Positions 22,086-38,259 of a stretch of 64,000 bases of DNA are shown one piece after another; the first letter of the stretch is position 1, and every line of letters begins with the position of its first letter. The translations under genes were made by a program, and so were the position numbers. The stretch covers positions 124,001-188,000 of IMG/VR virus record IMGVR_UViG_3300026292_000003. The stretch is one strand, 5' to 3'. The notes below the pieces were generated by a model. It did no database searches. It had not been told where the DNA came from and saw only the letters and a program-made list of their open reading frames with translations.

Positions 22086-22348
22086 TGAGACATTTTAAAA
22101 TTAATCCATATTTGGTTAAAAAAGGTTTTTATGTTAGTTCAATGTATTGGGGAGATTTACCCGGTGATGGATTTAAACTTATTTCAAGTGATGTTGTAGC
22201 AGGTCCTTTTAAAACTGCTGAAAGAGCACACGAAATTATGGAAAAGAATTTTAATTCTAATCCAATGGAATATGCAGTACACGGTCCAGCTAAAACTCCA
22301 AATGGAGATATTTGGTATAACAAAAATTACTATGGGGAGATTGTTTAG
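22085..22348 (+). CDS. Early hypothetical protein
   Basis: 87 aa, coupled. Confidence 0.7.
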   Translation: MRHFKINPYLVKKGFYVSSMYWGDLPGDGFKLISSDVVAGPFKTAERAHEIMEKNFNSNPMEYAVHGPAKTPNGDIWYNKNYYGEIV

Positions 22349-23460
22349 TGGAAAACATTACAAAACTAGAAACTTTATATAAAAGAGATACAACAGGTAA
22401 AGTCCGTATTTGGGAAGTTGAATACGGACATACAGGTGATACTGCTGGTACAAGAACTATTAGTGGTACACAAGATGGTCAAAAAGTTACTAGTGAATGG
22501 AATATAAGCACTCCTAAAAATGTAGGTAGAGCAAATGCCACTACTGCATTATCACAAGCACAATTTGAAGCACAGGCTTTATGGGATAAGAGAGTTGAAA
22601 AAGAGTATTTTACAGATGTAAGTAAAATTGACTCTTATGAAAAGTTTAAGCCAATGTTGGCACAAGACTATACTAAAAGACCACAGAGTAGTGGATACAG
22701 TCAACCTAAATTAGATGGTATCAGATGTATAGTAGATAAAAATGGAATGTGGACTAGAGCTGGAAAGCCTATTAATAGTTGTCCTCATATTTTTGAATCA
22801 TTAAAAACATTTATAGATGCAAATCCAAATATGATTATAGATGGTGAATTATATAATCATGAACTAAAAGCAGATTTTAATAAAATTACAAGTCTTGTTA
22901 GAAAAGTAAAATGTAGACCTAATGAGATTGCTGAAGCAAAAGAGTTAGTACAATATCACGTATATGATTGTTTTGATAGTAATAATCCTACTGCTAATTT
23001 TGTAGATAGAGTTAAAGTATTAAAAGAATTAAAAGATGAATATATCAGACCTGTAAGAACTGATATTTGCGAAACTCAGGAAGAATTAGATGTTTGTTAT
23101 AGTGACTATATGGAAAATGGTTATGAAGGACAAATGGTTAGAAACAATACACCTTATGAAAACAAAAGAAGTAAGAACTTGCTAAAAAGAAAAGAGTTCA
23201 AATCTGAAGAATATAAGGTTGTTGAAATGTTAGAAGGACAAGGTAACTGGTCAGGTTACACAAAAAGATTTGTACTTGAACTTCCAGATGGAAGACAGTT
23301 TGGAAGTGGTGTTAGAGGACAACAAGCACAATTAAAAGAATTATGGGAATCAAAAGAAACGCCAGATTGGGCTACTTGCAGATTCTTTGATTATACTCCA
23401 GATGGTGTTCCAAGATTTCCTGTAATAGTTGATTATGGAAAAGGACAAAGGGAGGACTAA
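22348..23460 (+). CDS. ATP-dependent DNA ligase
   Basis: Motif I QPKLDGIR, IIDGELY, YHVYDC, YEGQMVR, LLKRK and OB-fold with FFDYTPDGVPRFP. Confidence 0.92.
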   Translation: MENITKLETLYKRDTTGKVRIWEVEYGHTGDTAGTRTISGTQDGQKVTSEWNISTPKNVGRANATTALSQAQFEAQALWDKRVEKEYFTDVSKIDSYEKFKPMLAQDYTKRPQSSGYSQPKLDGIRCIVDKNGMWTRAGKPINSCPHIFESLKTFIDANPNMIIDGELYNHELKADFNKITSLVRKVKCRPNEIAEAKELVQYHVYDCFDSNNPTANFVDRVKVLKELKDEYIRPVRTDICETQEELDVCYSDYMENGYEGQMVRNNTPYENKRSKNLLKRKEFKSEEYKVVEMLEGQGNWSGYTKRFVLELPDGRQFGSGVRGQQAQLKELWESKETPDWATCRFFDYTPDGVPRFPVIVDYGKGQRED

Positions 23461-24568: not shown

Positions 24569-25084
24569 ATGGAATTGATTAGAAGAGCACTTGAATTTTC
24601 TACTGCGGCACACGCCGCAGTAGGCCAGAAAAGAAAGTATACGGGTGAAGATTATATTGTTCACCCTATTGCCGTTTCTGAGATTGTTGCGGCTTTTGGT
24701 GGATCAAAAGAAATGGTAGCCGCGGCCTTGTTACATGATACAGTAGAAGATACTAATGTAACCAGAGAGCAAATTGCTGAAGAATTTGGTTGGAAGATTT
24801 TTAAGTTAGTTGTAGAATTAACTGATGTAACTAAACCAGAAGATGGTAATAGAGCAACACGTAAAGCTATAGAAGCTAAACGTTTAGGTATGGCTAGTAA
24901 AGAAGCACAAATGATTAAACTAGCAGATCTTATTGATAACACAAAAACAATAGTAAAACATGATCCTAAATTTGCAGAAGTTTATATAAAAGAAAAAATA
25001 GATCTATTAGAGGCTATGGATAAAGTTCATGGTACAGATTTGTATATGAAAGCTAACCTTCAATTACAGGAAGTGCATGATTGA
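24569..25084 (+). CDS. HD-domain (p)ppGpp hydrolase-like protein (Mesh1/SAH type)
   Basis: AH..QKRK..GEDYIVHP, LLHDTVEDT and IKLADLIDN. Confidence 0.85.
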   Translation: MELIRRALEFSTAAHAAVGQKRKYTGEDYIVHPIAVSEIVAAFGGSKEMVAAALLHDTVEDTNVTREQIAEEFGWKIFKLVVELTDVTKPEDGNRATRKAIEAKRLGMASKEAQMIKLADLIDNTKTIVKHDPKFAEVYIKEKIDLLEAMDKVHGTDLYMKANLQLQEVHD

Positions 25085-32695: not shown

Positions 32696-33124
32696 ATGAA
32701 AATAGGATTTACTTGTTCAACATTTGATTTACTACACGCCGGGCATATTGCTATGTTGCGAGAAGCTAAAGCACAATGTGATTATTTAATAATAGGATTG
32801 CAAACAGATCCTACAATAAGCAGACCAACAAAGAATTCACCTATACAAACAGTTGTAGAAAGATATACACAATTAAAAGCAGTAGGGTATGTAGATGAAA
32901 TAATTCCATATACTACTGAACAAGATTTAGAAGATATACTTTCTATGTATAATATTGATGTAAGGGTATTAGGAGAAGAATATAGAGAAAAAGATTTTAC
33001 AGGAAAAGATATCTGTAAGCAGAGAGATATTGCTCTATACTTTAATAAGCGAGATCACAGGTTCAGTTCAACAGAATTGAGGCAACGTGTTAACACAAAG
33101 GAAATGAAAAATGAGAGTGCGTGA
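32696..33124 (+). CDS. Cytidylyltransferase (TagD-like)
   Basis: TFDLLHAGH (HIGH-like), GLQTDP and RFSST. Confidence 0.88.
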   Translation: MKIGFTCSTFDLLHAGHIAMLREAKAQCDYLIIGLQTDPTISRPTKNSPIQTVVERYTQLKAVGYVDEIIPYTTEQDLEDILSMYNIDVRVLGEEYREKDFTGKDICKQRDIALYFNKRDHRFSSTELRQRVNTKEMKNESA

Positions 33125-34232
33125 AGAAGTTAAACTAAATTTTGAAGATGTATTAATGGAACCAAAACGTTCTACATTAGGTAGTAGACGTGACGTACAA
33201 ATGACTAGAAAGTTTACATTTAGAAACTCTGGTAAAGTGATTGACTTCTGTCCTATATTTGCTAGTAATATGGATGGTGTAGGTACATTTGAAGTAGCTA
33301 AAGTATTACAAGAACATAAAATGATGACTGTAATTACAAAAAGTACACCACTAGAAGAATGGAAAGCGGCCGCTGGTACAGGTTTAAGAATGCAAAGTAT
33401 AAGTGTATGTACAGGTACAAATAAAATGTGGGACCCAGATGCACCAGACTATGCTAATATGAAAGCAGTACTAGAAGCATTTCCTGATGTAAAAATGATT
33501 ACTGTAGATGTTGCTAATGCTTATCACGAGAATTTTGTAGACTTTATTAAGATGATTAGAGATGAATATCCTGATAAAGTTATTGTAGCAGGTAACGTAG
33601 TTACACCAGAGATGGTAGAAGAATTAATTATAAACGGTGCTGACGTAGTTAAAATTGGTATTGGACCAGGCTCAGTATGTACAACAAGAACAATGACAGG
33701 TATTGGAGTACCACAGTTTTCAGCTATATTAGAATGTGCAGATGCGGCAAATGGCGTTGATGGACATATTATGGCAGATGGTGGTTGTGTACACCCAGGA
33801 GATATTGCAAAAGCACTTGGTGGTGGAGCTCATATGGTTATGATAGGTGGTATGTTAGCAGGACACAAAGAAGGTGGTGGTAAACTTATCACTAAACATA
33901 CAGCCACAGGTGGTGCGTATAAAACACCTGAGGGAACATATGTTCCTTATTATGAAGAACAACAGTTTGTTGAGTTCTACGGAATGAGTTCAGATCGTGC
34001 TAGAGAGAAGCATGGCAAACGAAAAGATGGATATAGAGGTAACGAAGGTAGACATATTGTTATGCCTTACAGAGGACCTATTAATGACACAGTTGAGAAT
34101 ATACTAGGTGGTGTTAGATCAGCGGCCACTTATATTGGAGCAAGACGTTTAAAGGATATGCCAAAGTGTGCAACATTCGTAAGAACAAATAATGTTATCA
34201 ATAGAACTTACGAGCAATTCACAGTAAAATAA
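33111..34232 (+). CDS. guaC: GMP reductase
   Basis: VDVANAY, KIGIGPGSVCTTR, ADGG, FYGMSS, ILGGVRSA. Confidence 0.92.
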   Translation: MRVREEVKLNFEDVLMEPKRSTLGSRRDVQMTRKFTFRNSGKVIDFCPIFASNMDGVGTFEVAKVLQEHKMMTVITKSTPLEEWKAAAGTGLRMQSISVCTGTNKMWDPDAPDYANMKAVLEAFPDVKMITVDVANAYHENFVDFIKMIRDEYPDKVIVAGNVVTPEMVEELIINGADVVKIGIGPGSVCTTRTMTGIGVPQFSAILECADAANGVDGHIMADGGCVHPGDIAKALGGGAHMVMIGGMLAGHKEGGGKLITKHTATGGAYKTPEGTYVPYYEEQQFVEFYGMSSDRAREKHGKRKDGYRGNEGRHIVMPYRGPINDTVENILGGVRSAATYIGARRLKDMPKCATFVRTNNVINRTYEQFTVK

Positions 34233-34310
34233 GTATTGCTCAAAATGCATAACAGCCTTTACTAATTAAAACATCAGTTTTTTTCACTTCCGTGATAAAT
34301 AGAAGTGAAG

Positions 34311-34436
34311 ACAAAAAAGCGACCTCAGCTTATAAAAAATGAGTGGCACTAGGGAAAGACCAGGGCGTGCCGACGCCTCAAAACCGACTGACACCGGAAA
34401 AGACTGGAATTGGATTCTTTCCCGAGAATGAATCCC
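34311..34436 (+). ncRNA. GC-rich structured RNA leader (manA-like?)
   Basis: Several stems (ctca/tgag, ggcac/gtgcc, ccgg/ctgg, ggattc/gaatcc) and two RAAAGA loops after a late promoter. Confidence 0.55.
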
Positions 34437-34457
34437 AAAAAATTAATGGAGAAGAAG

Positions 34458-34685
34458 ATGACTCGAACTTTGAGTGCTCTTGTAACGGCGATTTCTGATG
34501 CGTTAACCCCAAAAGGATCAACAGACTCGCAATTACTACTTTGGGCTAAAACAGAATATGGTAATGACTGGCAGTATGCATACAGATGGATGAAAGAGAA
34601 TCCTGGTACTGTACCTTTTAATAAACCAGTTGTAAAAATAGAAGTACAGAAGGATAAAGAACATGATGAATACTTTGGTGTCTAA
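34458..34685 (+). CDS. Small hypothetical protein
   Basis: GGAG RBS then ATG 34458; WAKTEYGNDWQYAY. Confidence 0.7.
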   Translation: MTRTLSALVTAISDALTPKGSTDSQLLLWAKTEYGNDWQYAYRWMKENPGTVPFNKPVVKIEVQKDKEHDEYFGV

Positions 34686-34851
34686 TTATTGTGCTATATG
34701 TGAAGCAGTATCACATTGGACAAGAAGATTTTTCGCAAGATTACTAGAAACTTTTGAAACAGTAGGGAAAGCAAGAGCTTCCGCAGAACTAACCCGACAA
34801 GGGTATCATAAAGAAGCAAAGGCGTTGATGTGCGATGTTAAAAGCGATTAA
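34663..34851 (+). CDS. Small hypothetical protein
   Basis: 62 aa; ARASAELTRQGY motif. Confidence 0.65.
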   Translation: MMNTLVSNYCAICEAVSHWTRRFFARLLETFETVGKARASAELTRQGYHKEAKALMCDVKSD

Positions 34852-34969
34852 GAAATTTTTTAAAAATATAACTATGTCAGAAAGCGAACGTTATCTAGCA
34901 AATTCAGTAGATTTAGTTGACCTTGAAAGAAGACAACGAGAATTAAGAACTAAAGGATTTAGAGTATAA
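34835..34969 (+). CDS. Small protein, DUF3563-like (not in ORF track)
   Basis: MLKAIKKFLKNITMSESERYLANSVDLVDLERRQRELRTKGFRV. Confidence 0.6.
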   Translation: MLKAIKKFFKNITMSESERYLANSVDLVDLERRQRELRTKGFRV

Positions 34970-35013
34970 TGTGGCCTTATACAGAAGAAGAGAACGATTT
35001 TTTAAGTAAATAG
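34969..35013 (+). CDS. 14-aa micropeptide MWPYTEEENDFLSK
   Basis: ATG overlaps the upstream stop (TAATG). Confidence 0.4.
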   Translation: MWPYTEEENDFLSK

Positions 35014-35058
35014 TACCATTGCTCATAAACTATAGTGTTAACTAGCATAAATAGTAGT

Positions 35059-36030
35059 ATGAGCAAGGTACATTTACTATCACAAATTATTACAAGTTTA
35101 CAACAGGAAACTACTCAGCAAGGCAAATATAACATATTAAGCCAATATGAAAAAGAAGCTATTCTGAAAAGAGTAGTAAGTATAGCCTATAATCCTTGGA
35201 TAGATTTAGAAATGCAAAACTTTGAACCCAAAAGAATGGGCAAAAAGTTTGGTATGAGTATACCTAAATTTTTACATATCATTGATGATATGATTGAAGA
35301 TAAATTCACACAAAAAGAAAAAGAGTTTTCTTGTCAAATGGCAATGATGCATATAAATGTTACAGAAGCAGAGTTGTTTATTAAGTTAGTTAGGCAAGAG
35401 TTAGATTTAGGATTAACAGACGAAACTATTAATAAAGTTTGGCCTGGGCTTGTAATGAGTTATCCTATAAGTTACCCAAGTGCAAAAGATTATAAATCGT
35501 TTAATCAATTTCCAGCCGCGGTACAGCCAGTTAGTAGAGGACTAAGAGTAAATATTATAATTCACAAAAATACAGTATCATACAAGGACAAGCTAGGGCA
35601 GGACATATTAGGTTGGGAAATATACAATGAACAATTTATTAATCTTGCACAAGGGAACAATACAGTATTTGATGGTCACGCAGTAGTAGCAAAAGGTCCA
35701 CAAATAGTTGAAACAGATAATCAAAAAGTATTAGAAGCAGATCCTAAAGACGTTAGATTTATGTTATGGGATGTAATTAGATTTGATGGATTTATAAAAG
35801 GTGAAGATACTAGAGTTGGTTATAACTGGCGTCATAACGGCATAGAACATATGCAGATACTAGCAATAGAGAAAAATAAACAACCTTGTTATGATTTAGT
35901 ACGTGCTGACCTTGTAGGTAGTCAAGAACAATTAGAACTTTCAGTAAGTAAAATGAAACCTTGTGTTATTAAAGCATTAGATGGTACGTGGAAACACGGT
36001 ATTGACAATTCGCAAATTATTATTAATTAA
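35059..36030 (+). CDS. Inactive T4-type DNA-ligase-like protein
   Basis: Ligase-type N-terminal domain; motif I reads QPVSRG rather than QxKxDG; no OB domain; ATG 35059 preferred. Confidence 0.65.
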   Translation: MSKVHLLSQIITSLQQETTQQGKYNILSQYEKEAILKRVVSIAYNPWIDLEMQNFEPKRMGKKFGMSIPKFLHIIDDMIEDKFTQKEKEFSCQMAMMHINVTEAELFIKLVRQELDLGLTDETINKVWPGLVMSYPISYPSAKDYKSFNQFPAAVQPVSRGLRVNIIIHKNTVSYKDKLGQDILGWEIYNEQFINLAQGNNTVFDGHAVVAKGPQIVETDNQKVLEADPKDVRFMLWDVIRFDGFIKGEDTRVGYNWRHNGIEHMQILAIEKNKQPCYDLVRADLVGSQEQLELSVSKMKPCVIKALDGTWKHGIDNSQIIIN

Positions 36031-36790
36031 GTCTTCCAACAATTCTTTTAATATATTTTGATCCTAGATGATCATAAAGTCCATCAAATAATTGAAATTT
36101 AGTCCAAGCCTTAATTGTACCTCTACCCTTATCAACAAATCTTTGCCACCAAGTAGTATTAGTTTTAATCTTCATATCGTATGTCATATAATATAATTTA
36201 CCTACGTGTGAGTAGTATCCAAATGGTGGTACTTGACATACAATGTCGTTATTATTAACAAACCTATAAGCTTCTATTTCGTCAAACTGTTTACCCCATT
36301 CTCTATCTCCAACACGTGGACTTCCATAAGTGTAAAGAACTGCATTTTTATATCCTAGCTCAACTAATCTACTTATTACAATAGTAGCCATTGCGGCTCC
36401 TAAACTATGTCCTGTAATAATAAACCTATCTTTTTTATTTTTAGTTTTTAACCATTTTGTAATAGAAGGCCAAAGTTTATCAACTTCACCTTTAAATCCA
36501 GCATGAACGTTTCCTTCAGTTTCACTATCTGCAGGCCATGCTTTAATGTCTGCTAATATGTCTTTAAATGATGTAGGTTCAGTTCCTCTAAATGCTAATA
36601 CATTATAATATGGTGTAGATATTCCATAACCTTGTGCATTTTCTACTTCAAAGTATTTTATTTTTTTAAATTTTAGATTTTGCTCTTTTAAATAGTTTTC
36701 TAAAGTAGCATGGTCTTCGTATGCATATTCACATATGTTGGCACATATTTCTGCAAACATCCAATCTATATTATTTTTCTGGGTGCTCAA
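36023..36790 (-). CDS. Lipase class 3 family protein
   Basis: LAFRGT, VHAGF, ITGHSLG, TYGSPRVG, NNDIV..VP and C-terminal DH. Confidence 0.9.
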   Translation of the reverse strand: MSTQKNNIDWMFAEICANICEYAYEDHATLENYLKEQNLKFKKIKYFEVENAQGYGISTPYYNVLAFRGTEPTSFKDILADIKAWPADSETEGNVHAGFKGEVDKLWPSITKWLKTKNKKDRFIITGHSLGAAMATIVISRLVELGYKNAVLYTYGSPRVGDREWGKQFDEIEAYRFVNNNDIVCQVPPFGYYSHVGKLYYMTYDMKIKTNTTWWQRFVDKGRGTIKAWTKFQLFDGLYDHLGSKYIKRIVGRLN

Positions 36791-37088
36791 TGATCTTCTC
36801 CAGTTTATGCGTAGGTATTCGTTTGTTGTCTATATAACGCCAAACCTTTCCTCTGCCATTACTTACTTGAAATATCGTTTCTCTATAACCTATACTTATT
36901 ATAGTAGCTTTTTCGCCATCTAGGAATACTATATCACCTGGTTCAAAACCTGGTTTCATTTTCCAACGTATACTGGCAATAAGATCACCAACAAGTTCCT
37001 TTACCCATAAAGCTACAAGGGCGGTAAGACCTAGTGCTATAATAGGTGCAAGAATGTTTGATAATTCAAGGGTTTGTTCTTCTAACAT
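36771..37088 (-). CDS. Small MscS-like membrane protein
   Basis: One TM then FEPGDIVFLDGE..IISIG, resembling the MscS beta-domain. Confidence 0.55.
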   Translation of the reverse strand: MLEEQTLELSNILAPIIALGLTALVALWVKELVGDLIASIRWKMKPGFEPGDIVFLDGEKATIISIGYRETIFQVSNGRGKVWRYIDNKRIPTHKLEKIIEHPEK

Positions 37089-37109
37089 AAAACTATTTAT
37101 CTTTTCTGC

Positions 37110-37190: not shown

Positions 37191-37724
37191 ATGAAAGGTT
37201 TAAAGATACCGTCAGTTACTTTTAGAGTTAGACAAGGTGACGAAGAAGTACCGGGAGAAGCTGGTTGTCCTATTGGAGGAGAATGGATTACTACAACAAC
37301 AGATGATTACTTCAAAGGTAAACGTATTGTATTGTTTAGTTTACCAGGTGCATTTACACCAACTTGTTCCTCAAAGCAGTTACCGGGTTTTGAAGGAAAT
37401 TATGAGACAATTAAGGCAAAAAACATTGATGAGATTTACTGCATAAGTGTAAATGACAGTTTCGTTATGAATGCTTGGGCAGAAAAAATGCAAATTAAAA
37501 ATGTTAAAATGATTCCAGATGGCTCAGGAAACTTTACTAGGTTTATGGGTATGCTAATTGGAAAGAACCATTTAGGATTTGGAATGCGTAGTTGGAGATA
37601 TATGGCAGTTATTAACGATGGAGTTGTTGAACATTGGTGGCAAGAACCAGGAATCAATAACGAAGGTGATGATAACGATCCATATGGAGAAACTTCTCCA
37701 GAAAATTTAATGAAAACTTTATAA
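37191..37724 (+). CDS. Peroxiredoxin (Prx5-like)
   Basis: LPGAFTPTCS, SVNDSFVM, DGSGNFT, RSWRY. Confidence 0.93.
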   Translation: MKGLKIPSVTFRVRQGDEEVPGEAGCPIGGEWITTTTDDYFKGKRIVLFSLPGAFTPTCSSKQLPGFEGNYETIKAKNIDEIYCISVNDSFVMNAWAEKMQIKNVKMIPDGSGNFTRFMGMLIGKNHLGFGMRSWRYMAVINDGVVEHWWQEPGINNEGDDNDPYGETSPENLMKTL

Positions 37725-37734
37725 AGAGAATATT

Positions 37735-38259
37735 TTGAAACAAGTAAAAGATACAATTAATAATTTCTTTAAATGGGTAAAAGGTACAGAATTAGTAGAG
37801 CTAACAGATATAGATGTTTCTGAAGATCCTGTAAGACCTGAATTAACACTTGAGTGGAGATTATCTGCTGAAAGAAAGATTTATGGACTTAAATTTGAGG
37901 ATAGCATAGAAGCAATAGTTTGTGTAGCATATACTAATGAAGTACCAATTACTGTTAGAGAAATGGACTATATGAGTCAGGTAGCTTGTCAAGAAAACCA
38001 ATCTGGTTCTATTGCAGTAGCTTATACAGTATGGTCAAGAAAAAGAGGAGCAGGTAAAGAGATAATTAATAAGTTACACGAGTTTTTAGTTAGCGAAAGA
38101 ACTGCGACGAAACGATTAGTAACATTGTCTCCTCTCACGCCTATGGCAACACATTTTCATATTAAAAATGGTGCAAAACAAATAAGTATTAATGATACTA
38201 CACAAAATTTTGAATATAGTTTAGTAAATTCAAAAACAAATTATAGTACATATAATTAA
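37735..38259 (+). CDS. GNAT-like hypothetical protein
   Basis: YTVWSRKRGAGKEII acetyl-CoA-loop-like motif; TTG start. Confidence 0.55.
   Translation: MKQVKDTINNFFKWVKGTELVELTDIDVSEDPVRPELTLEWRLSAERKIYGLKFEDSIEAIVCVAYTNEVPITVREMDYMSQVACQENQSGSIAVAYTVWSRKRGAGKEIINKLHEFLVSERTATKRLVTLSPLTPMATHFHIKNGAKQISINDTTQNFEYSLVNSKTNYSTYN

What the first reader, a model, noticed from the sequence alone, without database searches (positions are those of the whole stretch)
35059..36030. Catalytically dead DNA ligase paralogue alongside an intact ligase
Seen: a T4-gp30-like N-terminal helical domain and NTase-like motifs, but motif I is QPVSRG (adenylated Lys absent). Motif III has DGH for DGE, the motif IV Glu is lost and the OB domain is missing. 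An intact ligase is at 22348. It has a predicted leaderless late mRNA. Inference: a repurposed scaffold, for example a nick- or end-binding shield, a nucleotide sponge or an anti-defence decoy.
Basis: partly seen in the sequence, partly recalled or inferred. Interest (0 to 1): 0.6.

Follow-up and report, generated by a model that had tools for sequence, protein, structure and literature searches.

The report
Dead, truncated T4-type ligase kept by selection
A marine jumbo phage carries a shortened copy of its ancestral T4-type DNA ligase that has lost every catalytic residue and its OB domain, yet is conserved in over 100 related phage sequences, so it has been re-used for a non-ligase job that probably involves binding, not DNA sealing.

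Summary
ORF 35059-36030 (323 aa) is a T4-type ligase DNA-binding domain plus nucleotidyltransferase (NTase) domain. The AF2 model has pLDDT 92, and its best PDB match is T4 ligase 6DT1 at Z 22.5. The motif I Lys is Val, the motif III Glu is His, the motif IV Glu and both motif V Lys are gone, and the protein stops at the NTase/OB boundary.

It is not a decaying gene. About 100 full-length clusters and 55 IMG/VR loci that hold the whole gene are all intact and end at the same point. dN/dS is 0.06-0.25 in both domains.

It sits at the locus where related phages (a TARA contig, and loosely PA5oct) carry an active T4-type ligase. So it is the lineage's own ligase, not a recent duplicate of the LigE-like ligase at 22348. 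That intact ligase co-occurs in 10 of 18 related records.

A T4-late-like box (C)ATAAATA lies exactly 5 nt before the ATG, and the genome encodes a gp55-like sigma factor, which supports a leaderless late mRNA.

Adenine-contact residues stay invariant. Phosphate, metal and DNA-contact residues are systematically replaced, often by acidic ones. A nick-binding shield is therefore disfavoured, and an adenine-ligand or protein-binding pseudoenzyme is favoured. The function remains untested.

The parts
35046..35053 (+). T4-late-promoter-like box CATAAATA (T4 consensus TATAAATA). Exactly 5 nt (35054-35058) separate it from the ATG, so a T4-type start site would fall on the A of the ATG (leaderless).
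   Evidence: Sequence read. Genome-wide motif and spacing classes. Poisson P 3e-11 for the 5-nt class. Conservation in homologous loci. gp55-like sigma factor in the genome. The transcription start site itself is not mapped.
35059..36030 (+). CDS of the dead ligase (323 aa plus stop)
   Evidence: All homologues are intact and have the same length and end point.
35059..35448 (+). Residues 1-130: alpha-helical T4-type ligase DNA-binding domain. Most conserved DNA-phosphate contacts are replaced (T15/R to Q20, K48 to Q53, K49 to N/D54, R79 to D81, S118 to T/E120, S120 to E122). It also has new family-specific blocks: A-Y-N-P-W and G-K-x-F-G-M-G.
   Evidence: T4 contact residues taken from PMC6212786.
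35449..36027 (+). Residues 131-323: NTase (adenylation) domain fold, ending exactly at the NTase/OB boundary
   Evidence: (NTase alone superposes at rmsd 2.6 A on the ASFV ligase).
35509..35553 (+). Motif I remnant, residues 151-165 (F-P-A-A-V-Q-P-V-S-R-G-L-R-V-N). The nucleophile Lys is Val158 (I/L/V/Y/M in the family). The motif I Asp is variable. Q156, G161 and R163 are invariant.
35665..35682 (+). Motif III remnant, residues 203-208 (V-F-D-G-H-A). Glu217 of T4 is His207 here. It is His in 99 of 100 core-clade members, but V/C/A/L in deeper branches.
35755..35853 (+). Residues 233-265: motif IIIa (W237-D238, the adenine-stacking Trp) followed by the family signature D-G-F-x-x-G-x-D-T-R-x-G-Y-N-W-R-x-N-G-x-E-H-M. 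This is the most conserved block of the dead clade and is absent from active ligases.
35959..36027 (+). Residues 301-323: motif IV/V remnant. The Glu is lost, V303 and K305 are kept, and K-x-K of motif V becomes I-x-N. The stop codon follows directly; there is no OB domain.
22348..23460 (+). Intact ATP-dependent DNA ligase: a LigE-like NTase plus OB domain with a ~95-aa N-terminal extension. All catalytic motifs are present, and no late box lies directly upstream.
   Evidence: It co-occurs with the dead gene in 10 of 18 related records.
36023..36790 (-). Convergent Lipase_3 gene whose 3' end overlaps the dead ligase's stop by 8 nt. The adjacency is conserved in most related loci. This is context, not a shown functional link.
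36771..37100 (-). 105-aa predicted membrane protein heading the lipase operon. It has its own ATAAATA box 5 nt before the ATG (leaderless class).

Best explanation
This gene is the exapted, non-catalytic descendant of the T4-type DNA ligase that this jumbo-myovirus lineage once used. Nick sealing is now done by a separate LigE-like ligase at 22348.

Shown:
- It keeps the ligase DNA-binding-domain and NTase folds.
- It has lost the adenylated Lys, the metal-binding and phosphate-binding residues of motifs I, III, IV and V, the minor-groove helix, and the whole OB domain.
- It has been under purifying selection in both domains across a large family.
- It carries a late-type promoter box abutting its start codon.

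Inferred:
- It cannot self-adenylate or seal DNA.
- It probably no longer clamps duplex DNA, because conserved phosphate contacts are replaced by Gln, Asp or Glu.
- Selection preserves the adenine-recognition pocket (Q156, W237, V303, K305, with R163-D205) and new family-specific surfaces (the G-Y-N-W-R-x-N-G-x-E-H-M block and new loops in the DNA-binding domain).

Most likely mode of action: a late-expressed binding protein. It would hold an adenine-containing small ligand in the old AMP pocket, whose phosphate-binding lysines are now hydrophobic, and/or a protein partner on the remodelled surface. That makes it a sensor, sequestering protein or adaptor rather than an enzyme acting on DNA.
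For: Fold and homology.

Loss of all five phosphate, metal and nucleophile residues in 11 of 11 dead representatives, against 8 of 8 active ones that keep them.

Adenine contacts:
- Q157, W282 (Phe in one) and K349 equivalents are kept in 11 of 11 dead representatives.
- The R164 equivalent is kept in 9 of 11 and the D215 equivalent in 10 of 11.
- Six of seven pocket positions are at least 98% conserved in 100 sequences, against 19% of all positions (P 2e-4).

DNA contacts that are invariant in active ligases are replaced or deleted: using the T4 contact list.

Purifying selection: omega 0.06-0.25 at low dS in both domains, and no stops in the 55 full-length loci.

Orthology to an active ligase:
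- The active 446-aa P0129 lies at the same IMPDH ... ligase ... Lipase_3 locus.
- P0129 is the best-scoring active hit to the family profile.
- PA5oct has a single active T4-type ligase downstream of Hsp20 and ClpS.

The intact second ligase co-occurs.

Late promoter.

Contigs from RNA libraries of two studies cover the gene with 0 mismatches. This is weak evidence, because DNA carry-over is possible.
Against: - No ligand or partner was identified.
- Conservation of the pocket residues could be structural. In T4 the R164-D215 pair is a structural H-bond network, and the new hydrophobic residues (I/L/V158, I321) might simply plug the pocket.
- His207, and the ribose contact it replaces, is not conserved in the deeper dead branches.
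- The loop of the DNA-binding domain keeps some basic residues (K58, K62). The active sister P0129 also lacks K48/K49. Residual or non-canonical nucleic-acid binding is therefore not excluded.
- Late timing rests on a motif, not on a mapped start site.
Confidence: 0.5

Rival explanations
1. Nick- or DNA-end-binding shield. The dead ligase still recognises nicks or ends through its DNA-binding and NTase domains and occupies them without sealing. For example, it might protect ends, or preserve nicks as clamp-loading sites for late transcription.
For: - The ligase fold is retained.
- The equivalent of R182, the 5'-phosphate contact, is Lys in 90% of the core family.
- Some basic loop residues are kept.
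- Late expression would suit a nick-dependent late-transcription role.
Against: - The OB domain and helix alpha11 (R254, N262, K266), which together insert into the minor groove at the nick, are absent.
- R79, N84, S118, S120 and K124, invariant or nearly so in active ligases, are replaced, mostly by D, E, G or Q, in both dead lineages.
- R182 is not basic in 8 of 11 deep representatives.
- The DNA-binding domain has net charge -2 and the NTase domain -8, against roughly +2 to +5 and 0 in most active relatives.
Confidence: 0.12
2. Late morphogenetic or particle-associated factor. Like T4 gp63 (RNA ligase 1), whose tail-fibre-attachment activity is separable from ligation, the ligase scaffold would serve virion assembly or be packaged into the particle.
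For: - The late-type leaderless promoter is shared with structural genes.
- There is a gp63 precedent (PMC3004832).
- The active T4-type ligase gp217 of the related cultured phage PA5oct carries an ESI-MS/MS note. It was detected in purified-particle preparations.
Against: - The PA5oct paper itself lists 'virion-unrelated enzymes' among its MS hits, so the detection may be carry-over.
- There is no structural-gene neighbourhood. The gene sits among metabolic and auxiliary genes.
- This idea does not explain why the adenine-contact residues stay invariant.
Confidence: 0.15
3. Non-catalytic partner or regulator of the intact LigE-like ligase. For example, it might supply a T4-type N-terminal domain in trans or compete with the active enzyme.
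For: The two genes co-occur in 10 of 18 related records. Pseudoenzymes often regulate active relatives (general knowledge).
Against: - The two proteins are not close paralogues (E 0.1).
- The DNA-binding domain has lost most of its DNA contacts, so supplying DNA binding in trans is unlikely.
- Their promoters differ: the dead gene has a late box, and the ligase lies inside an SD-led operon.
- Absences in the other 8 records are uninformative, because those records are only 10-31% complete.
Confidence: 0.07
4. Still an enzyme, with new chemistry in the old active site. For example, His207 or Ser159 might act on an adenylated substrate.
For: H207 and S159 are each 99% conserved in the core clade and lie next to the retained adenosine pocket.
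Against: In the deeper branches of the dead clade, position 207 is V/C/A/L and position 159 is I/V/Y. These residues are therefore not required by the family as a whole. No metal ligands remain.
Confidence: 0.08
5. Functionless relic on its way to loss.
For: There is a long stem branch (1.1 changes per column) after inactivation, and Pfam and NCBIfam models no longer detect the protein.
Against: - About 100 clusters and 55 full-length loci are intact, with the same length.
- Omega is 0.06-0.25.
- 61 positions are invariant.
- The promoter is conserved.
Confidence: 0.02

Closest known systems
Bacteriophage T4 DNA ligase gp30 (PDB 6DT1; Shi et al. 2018, PMC6212786) and the ~425-445-aa marine T4-type ligases such as Pmar-Lig (6RAS/6RAR)
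   Same: The same seven-helix DNA-binding domain and NTase fold (Z 22.5 and 20.8). They share the linker N-K-V-W-P-G-L, Q157, G162, R164, D215-G216, W282-D283 and K349.
   Different: No Lys159, Asp161, Glu217, Glu344, Lys365 or Lys367. No helix alpha11, no gp45-binding loop and no OB domain or motif VI. The DNA-backbone contacts are replaced. The predicted arrangement of the two domains differs from DNA-bound ligases (rmsd ~12 A overall, against 2.6 A for the NTase alone).
Active orthologue P0129 (446 aa, TARA metagenome contig) and PA5oct gp217 (Arenbergviridae)
   Same: P0129 lies at the same locus (IMPDH upstream, convergent Lipase_3 downstream) and shares the I-R-Y-D-G-F-x-x-G-x-D-x-R block. 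It is the best-scoring active hit to the family profile. PA5oct gp217 lies downstream of Hsp20 and ClpS, as the dead gene does in related marine contigs.
   Different: Both are full-length, with all catalytic motifs and an OB domain. PA5oct gp217 is the only PF01068 gene in the PA5oct genome; this could not be checked for P0129's 39.7-kb contig.
Stand-alone alpha-helical ligase DNA-binding-domain proteins of T4-like cyanophages (Iyer et al. 2021, PMC7824862; e.g. AAX44695.1)
   Same: A ligase-derived, non-catalytic module kept by phages. There is a weak match of residues 3-131 to phrog_461 (E 0.004).
   Different: Those proteins are the DNA-binding domain only, and were proposed to recruit a host ligase in phages that lack one. 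Here the NTase domain is also retained, a phage ligase is present, and the DNA contacts of the DNA-binding domain are largely lost.
T4 gp63 (RNA ligase 1 / tail-fibre attachment), and catalytically inactive DNA ligase IV in NHEJ (PMC10858965)
   Same: Precedents for members of the ligase superfamily having a ligation-independent, structural or assembly role.
   Different: Both are still active enzymes, or engineered mutants. Neither is a naturally dead, truncated family.

Membership tests
ATP-dependent DNA ligase (covalent nucleotidyltransferase superfamily) | NTase (adenylation) domain fold | tested here: met
   AF2 model with pLDDT 92. NTase residues ~131-323 superpose on ASFV, LigD, LigE and T7 ligases at rmsd 2.6-3.4 A, Z 16-18.
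ATP-dependent DNA ligase (covalent nucleotidyltransferase superfamily) | Motif I K-x-D-G-x-R with the adenylated lysine | tested here: not met
   The Lys position is V158 (I/L/V/Y/M/C/E/N/D/R across the family). The Asp position is R/K/Q/T and others..
ATP-dependent DNA ligase (covalent nucleotidyltransferase superfamily) | Motif III Glu, motif IV Glu and motif V Lys-x-Lys | tested here: not met
   E217 is His (V/C/A/L in deep branches). E344 is a gap or a variable residue. K365 is Ile in 98%. K367 is variable..
ATP-dependent DNA ligase (covalent nucleotidyltransferase superfamily) | C-terminal OB domain with motif VI | tested here: not met
   The protein ends at the motif V position. The next gene is on the opposite strand. 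All 55 full-length loci end at the same place.
ATP-dependent DNA ligase (covalent nucleotidyltransferase superfamily) | Pfam PF01068 or NCBIfam ligase models at their curated cut-offs | tested here: not met
   No Pfam or NCBIfam hit, even at E 10 or 0.01. PF01068 searches of related records find only the other ligase.
T4-type ligase subfamily (alpha-helical DNA-binding domain + NTase + OB) | Compact seven-helix N-terminal DNA-binding domain homologous to T4 gp30 residues 1-129 | tested here: met
   phmmer to 6DT1 and 5WFY, hhalign, helices H6-127 in the model and Z 22.5 spanning both domains.
T4-type ligase subfamily (alpha-helical DNA-binding domain + NTase + OB) | Conserved DNA-backbone contact residues of the DNA-binding domain and helix alpha11 | tested here: not met
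   R79, N84, S118, S120, K124, R254, N262 and K266 are replaced or deleted in dead representatives and kept in 8 active ones.
T4-like late gene (gp55-dependent promoter) | TATAAATA-like -10 box, a gp55 homologue in the genome, and the box shared with structural genes | tested here: met
   CATAAATA at 35046-35053. The box lies upstream of the portal and tail-fibre genes. gp55-like sigma factor: phrog_12791 E 3e-89.
T4-like late gene (gp55-dependent promoter) | Mapped transcription start and late timing | not testable with these tools
   Only assembled contigs from RNA libraries were available. They cannot show 5' ends or timing.
Known phage nucleotide sponges and anti-defence proteins; defence-system components | Sequence homology to catalogued families | tested here: inconclusive
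   PADLOC gives no hit, but it catalogues defence proteins, not anti-defence proteins. No anti-defence library was available. Ligand binding was not testable.

The most novel reading that the evidence does not exclude
The old AMP pocket of a DNA ligase has been converted into a high-affinity receptor for an adenine-containing small molecule. Candidates include an immune second messenger, an NAD-derived nucleotide, or a SAM/5'-deoxyadenosine-type metabolite, given that the phosphate-binding lysines became hydrophobic. This would make the family a new class of phage sponge or sensor pseudoenzyme, possibly evolved twice from active ligases in marine jumbo phages.
Probability: 0.2. Interest if true: 0.8.

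Novelty: new variant of a known kind. Interest (0 to 1): 0.55.

Why it matters
Naturally dead DNA ligases kept by selection are, as far as my literature searches show, not described for phages.

This family is large and widespread in ocean metagenomes. It has a clear active orthologue for comparison. It also shows a clean pattern: the adenine-recognition residues are kept, while the chemistry and the DNA contacts are lost.

That gives a directly testable case of how a core replication enzyme is recycled after another ligase takes over its job. If the pocket binds a signalling nucleotide, it would add a new fold to the phage counter-defence or regulatory repertoire.

The finding also warns annotators that 'DNA ligase' labels assigned by fold or PHROG to this family are wrong as to activity.

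Tried and rejected
- **Complex of the dead and intact ligases** (complex prediction): score 0.00, no verdict. Not used as evidence either way.
- **Tandem-duplication origin.** The 326-aa ORF just upstream of active P0129 in L083 is unrelated to either ligase. Rejected.
- **Two independent inactivations.**
  - The quick site-heterogeneous tree pairs dead P0130 with active P0129 (SH-aLRT 95).
  - P0129 and P0130 share a near-identical block and a DUF3307 neighbour.
  - Under LG+G4, however, a single dead clade is not rejected and has the higher likelihood (p-AU 0.69).
  - The careful tree did not finish. The question is left open.
- **Searches that could not be completed.**
  - Close relatives of P0129 in IMG/VR: none found.
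  - Searching the P0129 contig for a second ligase was not possible, because the record is not held.
- **Searches with no hit.**
  - Megablast of the region against cultured phages.
  - Pfam, NCBIfam and PADLOC on the dead protein.
  - T4 gp45 against the genome. The record is only 60% complete.
- **BFVD and Atlas look-ups** return only ordinary ligases or ligase-named clusters.
- **His207 as a new catalytic residue:** set aside, because it is not conserved in deep branches.
- **Functional link to the Lipase_3 neighbour:** the adjacency is conserved, but the genes are convergent, and a sub-clade lacks the lipase. Treated as synteny only.
Full report
**Where the window lies.** The window is bases 124001-188000 of a 221,643-bp IMG/VR virus record estimated to be 60% complete. 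GC content is about 33%. The phage is a large myovirus. It encodes a tail sheath, portal, large terminase, long tail fibres and an SbcC-like nuclease. Its sheath is nearest (37%) to the jumbo phages Atu_ph07 and PA5oct. Related marine contigs reach 250-320 kb. They carry ClpP, ClpX, ClpS, IF3, ribosomal protein S21, HSP20 and many metabolic genes.

**Observation.** The ORF at 35059-36030 (+) encodes 323 aa.
- Pfam and NCBIfam see nothing.
- PHROG_114 (ATP-dependent DNA ligase) matches at E 2e-20.
- phmmer finds T4 ligase 6DT1 at E 4.5e-7 and its isolated DNA-binding domain 5WFY.
- A 44-sequence alignment gives an AF2 model with pLDDT 92 and pTM 0.86.
- Foldseek ranks 6DT1 first at E 2.6e-17, then Pmar-Lig and a Rhizobium phage ligase.
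- VIA-align gives Z 22.5 over model residues 5-323 against T4 residues 0-367, which is the DNA-binding domain plus the NTase domain and nothing else.
- hhalign of the family against 12 active T4-type ligases gives probability 100% and E 1.7e-40.
K159 is V158, D161 is R160, E217 is H207, E344 is lost, and K365 and K367 are I321 and N323. The chain stops where the OB domain should begin.
- The gene at 22348-23460 is an intact ligase with all motifs.

**Not a pseudogene.**
- The word search found about 100 full-length clusters of 317-337 aa at 44-88% identity. None has a Pfam hit. It also found fragments, and then true ligases of 424-443 aa at 24-28% identity.
- IMG/VR gave 59 loci down to 32% identity. 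The 55 that hold the whole gene are open, and all end at the same point.
- Pairwise dN/dS is 0.06-0.25 for pairs with dS below 0.55. One example is the window against L014, with dN 0.076, dS 0.53 and omega 0.145. The median omega is 0.24 in each domain.
- In 100 sequences, 61 positions are at least 98% conserved.
- The exhaustive profile search finds eight full-length 50%-identity clusters of this truncated type (seven of the main clade, plus P0130). After those, the 446-aa active ligase P0129 is the best-scoring complete enzyme.

**Origin.** The dead protein and the intact ligase in the same genome are not detectably similar by BLASTP (E 0.1).
- The intact one is LigE-like (PRK09125, E 1e-34; PDB 4D05 and 9FZX).
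- The dead gene lies between an IMPDH/GMP-reductase gene and a convergent Lipase_3 gene. This arrangement holds in nearly all homologous loci.
- On a TARA contig, the same position holds the active T4-type ligase P0129 (PF01068 plus OB_2, all motifs).
- On another contig, the closely related but dead, OB-less P0130 occupies that position.
- PA5oct has one active T4-type ligase, downstream of Hsp20 and ClpS. It is the only PF01068 gene in that genome.
- The dead gene is therefore best read as the orthologue of the lineage's T4-type ligase.
- The LigE-like ligase co-occurs in 4 of 5, and then 6 of 13, related records. The remaining records are 10-31% fragments. This is consistent with functional displacement followed by re-use.
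- Whether inactivation happened once or twice is unresolved.

**What was kept and what was lost.** I used the published T4 contact list (PMC6212786) and compared 8 active with 11 dead representatives and the 100-member family.
- *Adenine recognition is kept.* Q156 is present in 100/100. W237 is present in 100/100, with Phe in one deep branch. V303 is hydrophobic throughout. K305 is present in 99/100 and in 11/11 representatives. R163 is 100% in the core and 9/11 in representatives. D205 is 100% in the core and 10/11 in representatives. Six of seven pocket positions fall among the 19% most conserved sites (P 2e-4).
- *Every phosphate, metal and nucleophile residue is replaced in every dead sequence.* K159 and K365 became hydrophobic.
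- *DNA contacts are dismantled.* Helix alpha11 (R254, N262, K266) is truncated. R79, N84, S118, S120 and K124, invariant or nearly so in active enzymes, are replaced. S118 and S120 are mostly Asp or Glu, in both P0130 and the main clade. Acidic caps at helix N-termini that normally bind phosphates are what one expects when DNA binding is abandoned (my inference).
- *Net charge is lower than in most active relatives*.
- *New blocks appear that are specific to the dead clade.* These are G-Y-N-W-R-x-N-G-x-E-H-M after motif IIIa, and A-Y-N-P-W and G-K-x-F-G-M-G in the DNA-binding domain.
- *The two domains are confidently placed in the model (pTM 0.86), but not as in DNA-bound ligases* (overall rmsd ~12 A). 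This may reflect a fixed arrangement. I could not inspect coordinates.

**Expression.** ATAAATA (35047-35053) lies 5 nt before the ATG.
- The same box, usually (G/C)ATAAATA, precedes the portal gene, tail-fibre genes and many others at 17-34 nt, with an AGGAG-like leader.
- Eight genes have it at exactly 5 nt with no Shine-Dalgarno sequence, against 0.19 expected (P 3e-11).
- By T4 geometry, where the box ends at -6 (established knowledge), transcription would start on the A of the ATG.
- The box and its spacing are conserved in about 30 of 33 distinct homologous upstream regions, although the sequence further upstream is unalignable. Three divergent loci instead have the box followed by an SD-bearing leader.
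- A gp55-like late sigma factor lies next to the SbcCD genes, as in T4.
- The near-invariant N-terminus MSK may partly reflect constraints on a leaderless 5' end (inference).
- Contigs from RNA libraries of two studies cover 35304-35644 with no mismatches. One contig (34832-35114) bridges the start. Two contigs from one sample stop at 35047. Contigs prove neither transcription nor 5' ends.

**Mechanism.** I commit to a non-catalytic binding protein made late in infection. It cannot adenylate or seal DNA, and it is unlikely to clamp DNA. The preserved adenine pocket, now lined by hydrophobic residues where the phosphate lysines were, is the best candidate functional site. The remodelled surfaces may bind a protein.
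- *Rivals.* A nick shield is disfavoured by the contact analysis. A gp63-like morphogenetic or particle-associated role draws on the late promoter and on the PA5oct orthologue seen in particle preparations. The others are a regulator of the active ligase, new chemistry in the old active site, and decay (refuted).
- The complex prediction with the intact ligase gave no verdict.

**Novelty.** Literature searches found no natural dead phage DNA ligase. The nearest concept is the stand-alone ligase DNA-binding domain of T4-like cyanophages (PMC7824862). I rate this a new variant of a known kind, of moderate interest. Interest would be high if a ligand is found.

Noticed in passing
whole genome G000; in the window e.g. 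35046-35053, 37094-37100 (-): A genome-wide promoter-like box (G/C)ATAAATA occurs in two spacing classes. In one it lies 17-34 nt before the ATG with an AGGAG-like leader (portal, tail fibres and many others). In the other it lies exactly 5 nt before the ATG with no SD (8 genes), which suggests a set of leaderless late mRNAs.
   Followed up: partly
G000:C1:38691-39572 (outside the window; locus L082:985-1866): A gp55-like sigma factor for late transcription (phrog_12791, E 3e-89) lies next to SbcD/SbcC-like genes, mirroring the T4 gene order 55-47-46. No gp45 clamp was found by a T4 gp45 query in this 60%-complete record.
   Followed up: partly
L083:5568-6908 and L085:3259-4182: An active 446-aa T4-type ligase (P0129) and a dead 307-aa OB-less relative (P0130, 40% identical) sit at the same locus in two related metagenomic phages. 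Each is followed by an overlapping DUF3307 gene. P0130 may represent a second, independent inactivation, but the tree tests are inconclusive.
   Followed up: partly
homologous loci L014-L072, about 10-25 nt upstream of the dead-ligase ATG: A second conserved element, roughly T-A-G-T-T-T-T-A-A-T, lies 3-4 nt upstream of the ATAAATA box in most homologous loci. The window has T-A-G-T-G-T-T-A-A-C. Its role is unknown; it could be an extended promoter or a regulatory site.
   Followed up: no
window 36023-36790 (-) and 36771-37088 (-): A Lipase_3 gene and a 105-aa predicted membrane protein form a convergent late operon. Its 3' end overlaps the dead ligase's stop codon. The overlap is conserved across most of the family. 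In one sub-clade the lipase is missing and the membrane-protein gene abuts the dead ligase directly.
   Followed up: partly
window 32696-34232, 34835-34969, 37191-38259, 24569-25084: The neighbourhood is rich in auxiliary genes: a cytidylyltransferase-like protein (possibly NMNAT-like), IMPDH/GMP reductase, a 44-aa DUF3563 ORF, a peroxiredoxin, a weak malonyl-CoA-decarboxylase-like ORF, and a 171-aa ORF at 24569-25084 that may be HD-domain (an HD_4 gene was seen in a related contig; this ORF was not scanned). Related contigs add ClpXP, ClpS, IF3, ribosomal protein S21, HSP20, glutamate dehydrogenase, NifU and radical-SAM genes.
   Followed up: partly
window 34307-35047: Contigs from two RNA-library runs of one sample both end at 35047, the first base of the ATAAATA box. 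The upstream small-ORF region has higher contig depth than the gene body. This could be a transcript boundary or an assembly break.
   Followed up: no
L079:5001-6371 (PA5oct gp217): The active T4-type ligase of the cultured relative PA5oct carries an 'ESI-MS/MS' note. It was detected in purified-particle proteomics. The paper counts some such hits as virion-unrelated enzymes.
   Followed up: partly
window 22348-22630: The intact LigE-like ligase has a ~95-aa N-terminal extension with no Pfam match. It starts with GTG, overlapping the stop codon of an 87-aa ORF. The extension is conserved in four homologues (70-91% identity).
   Followed up: no
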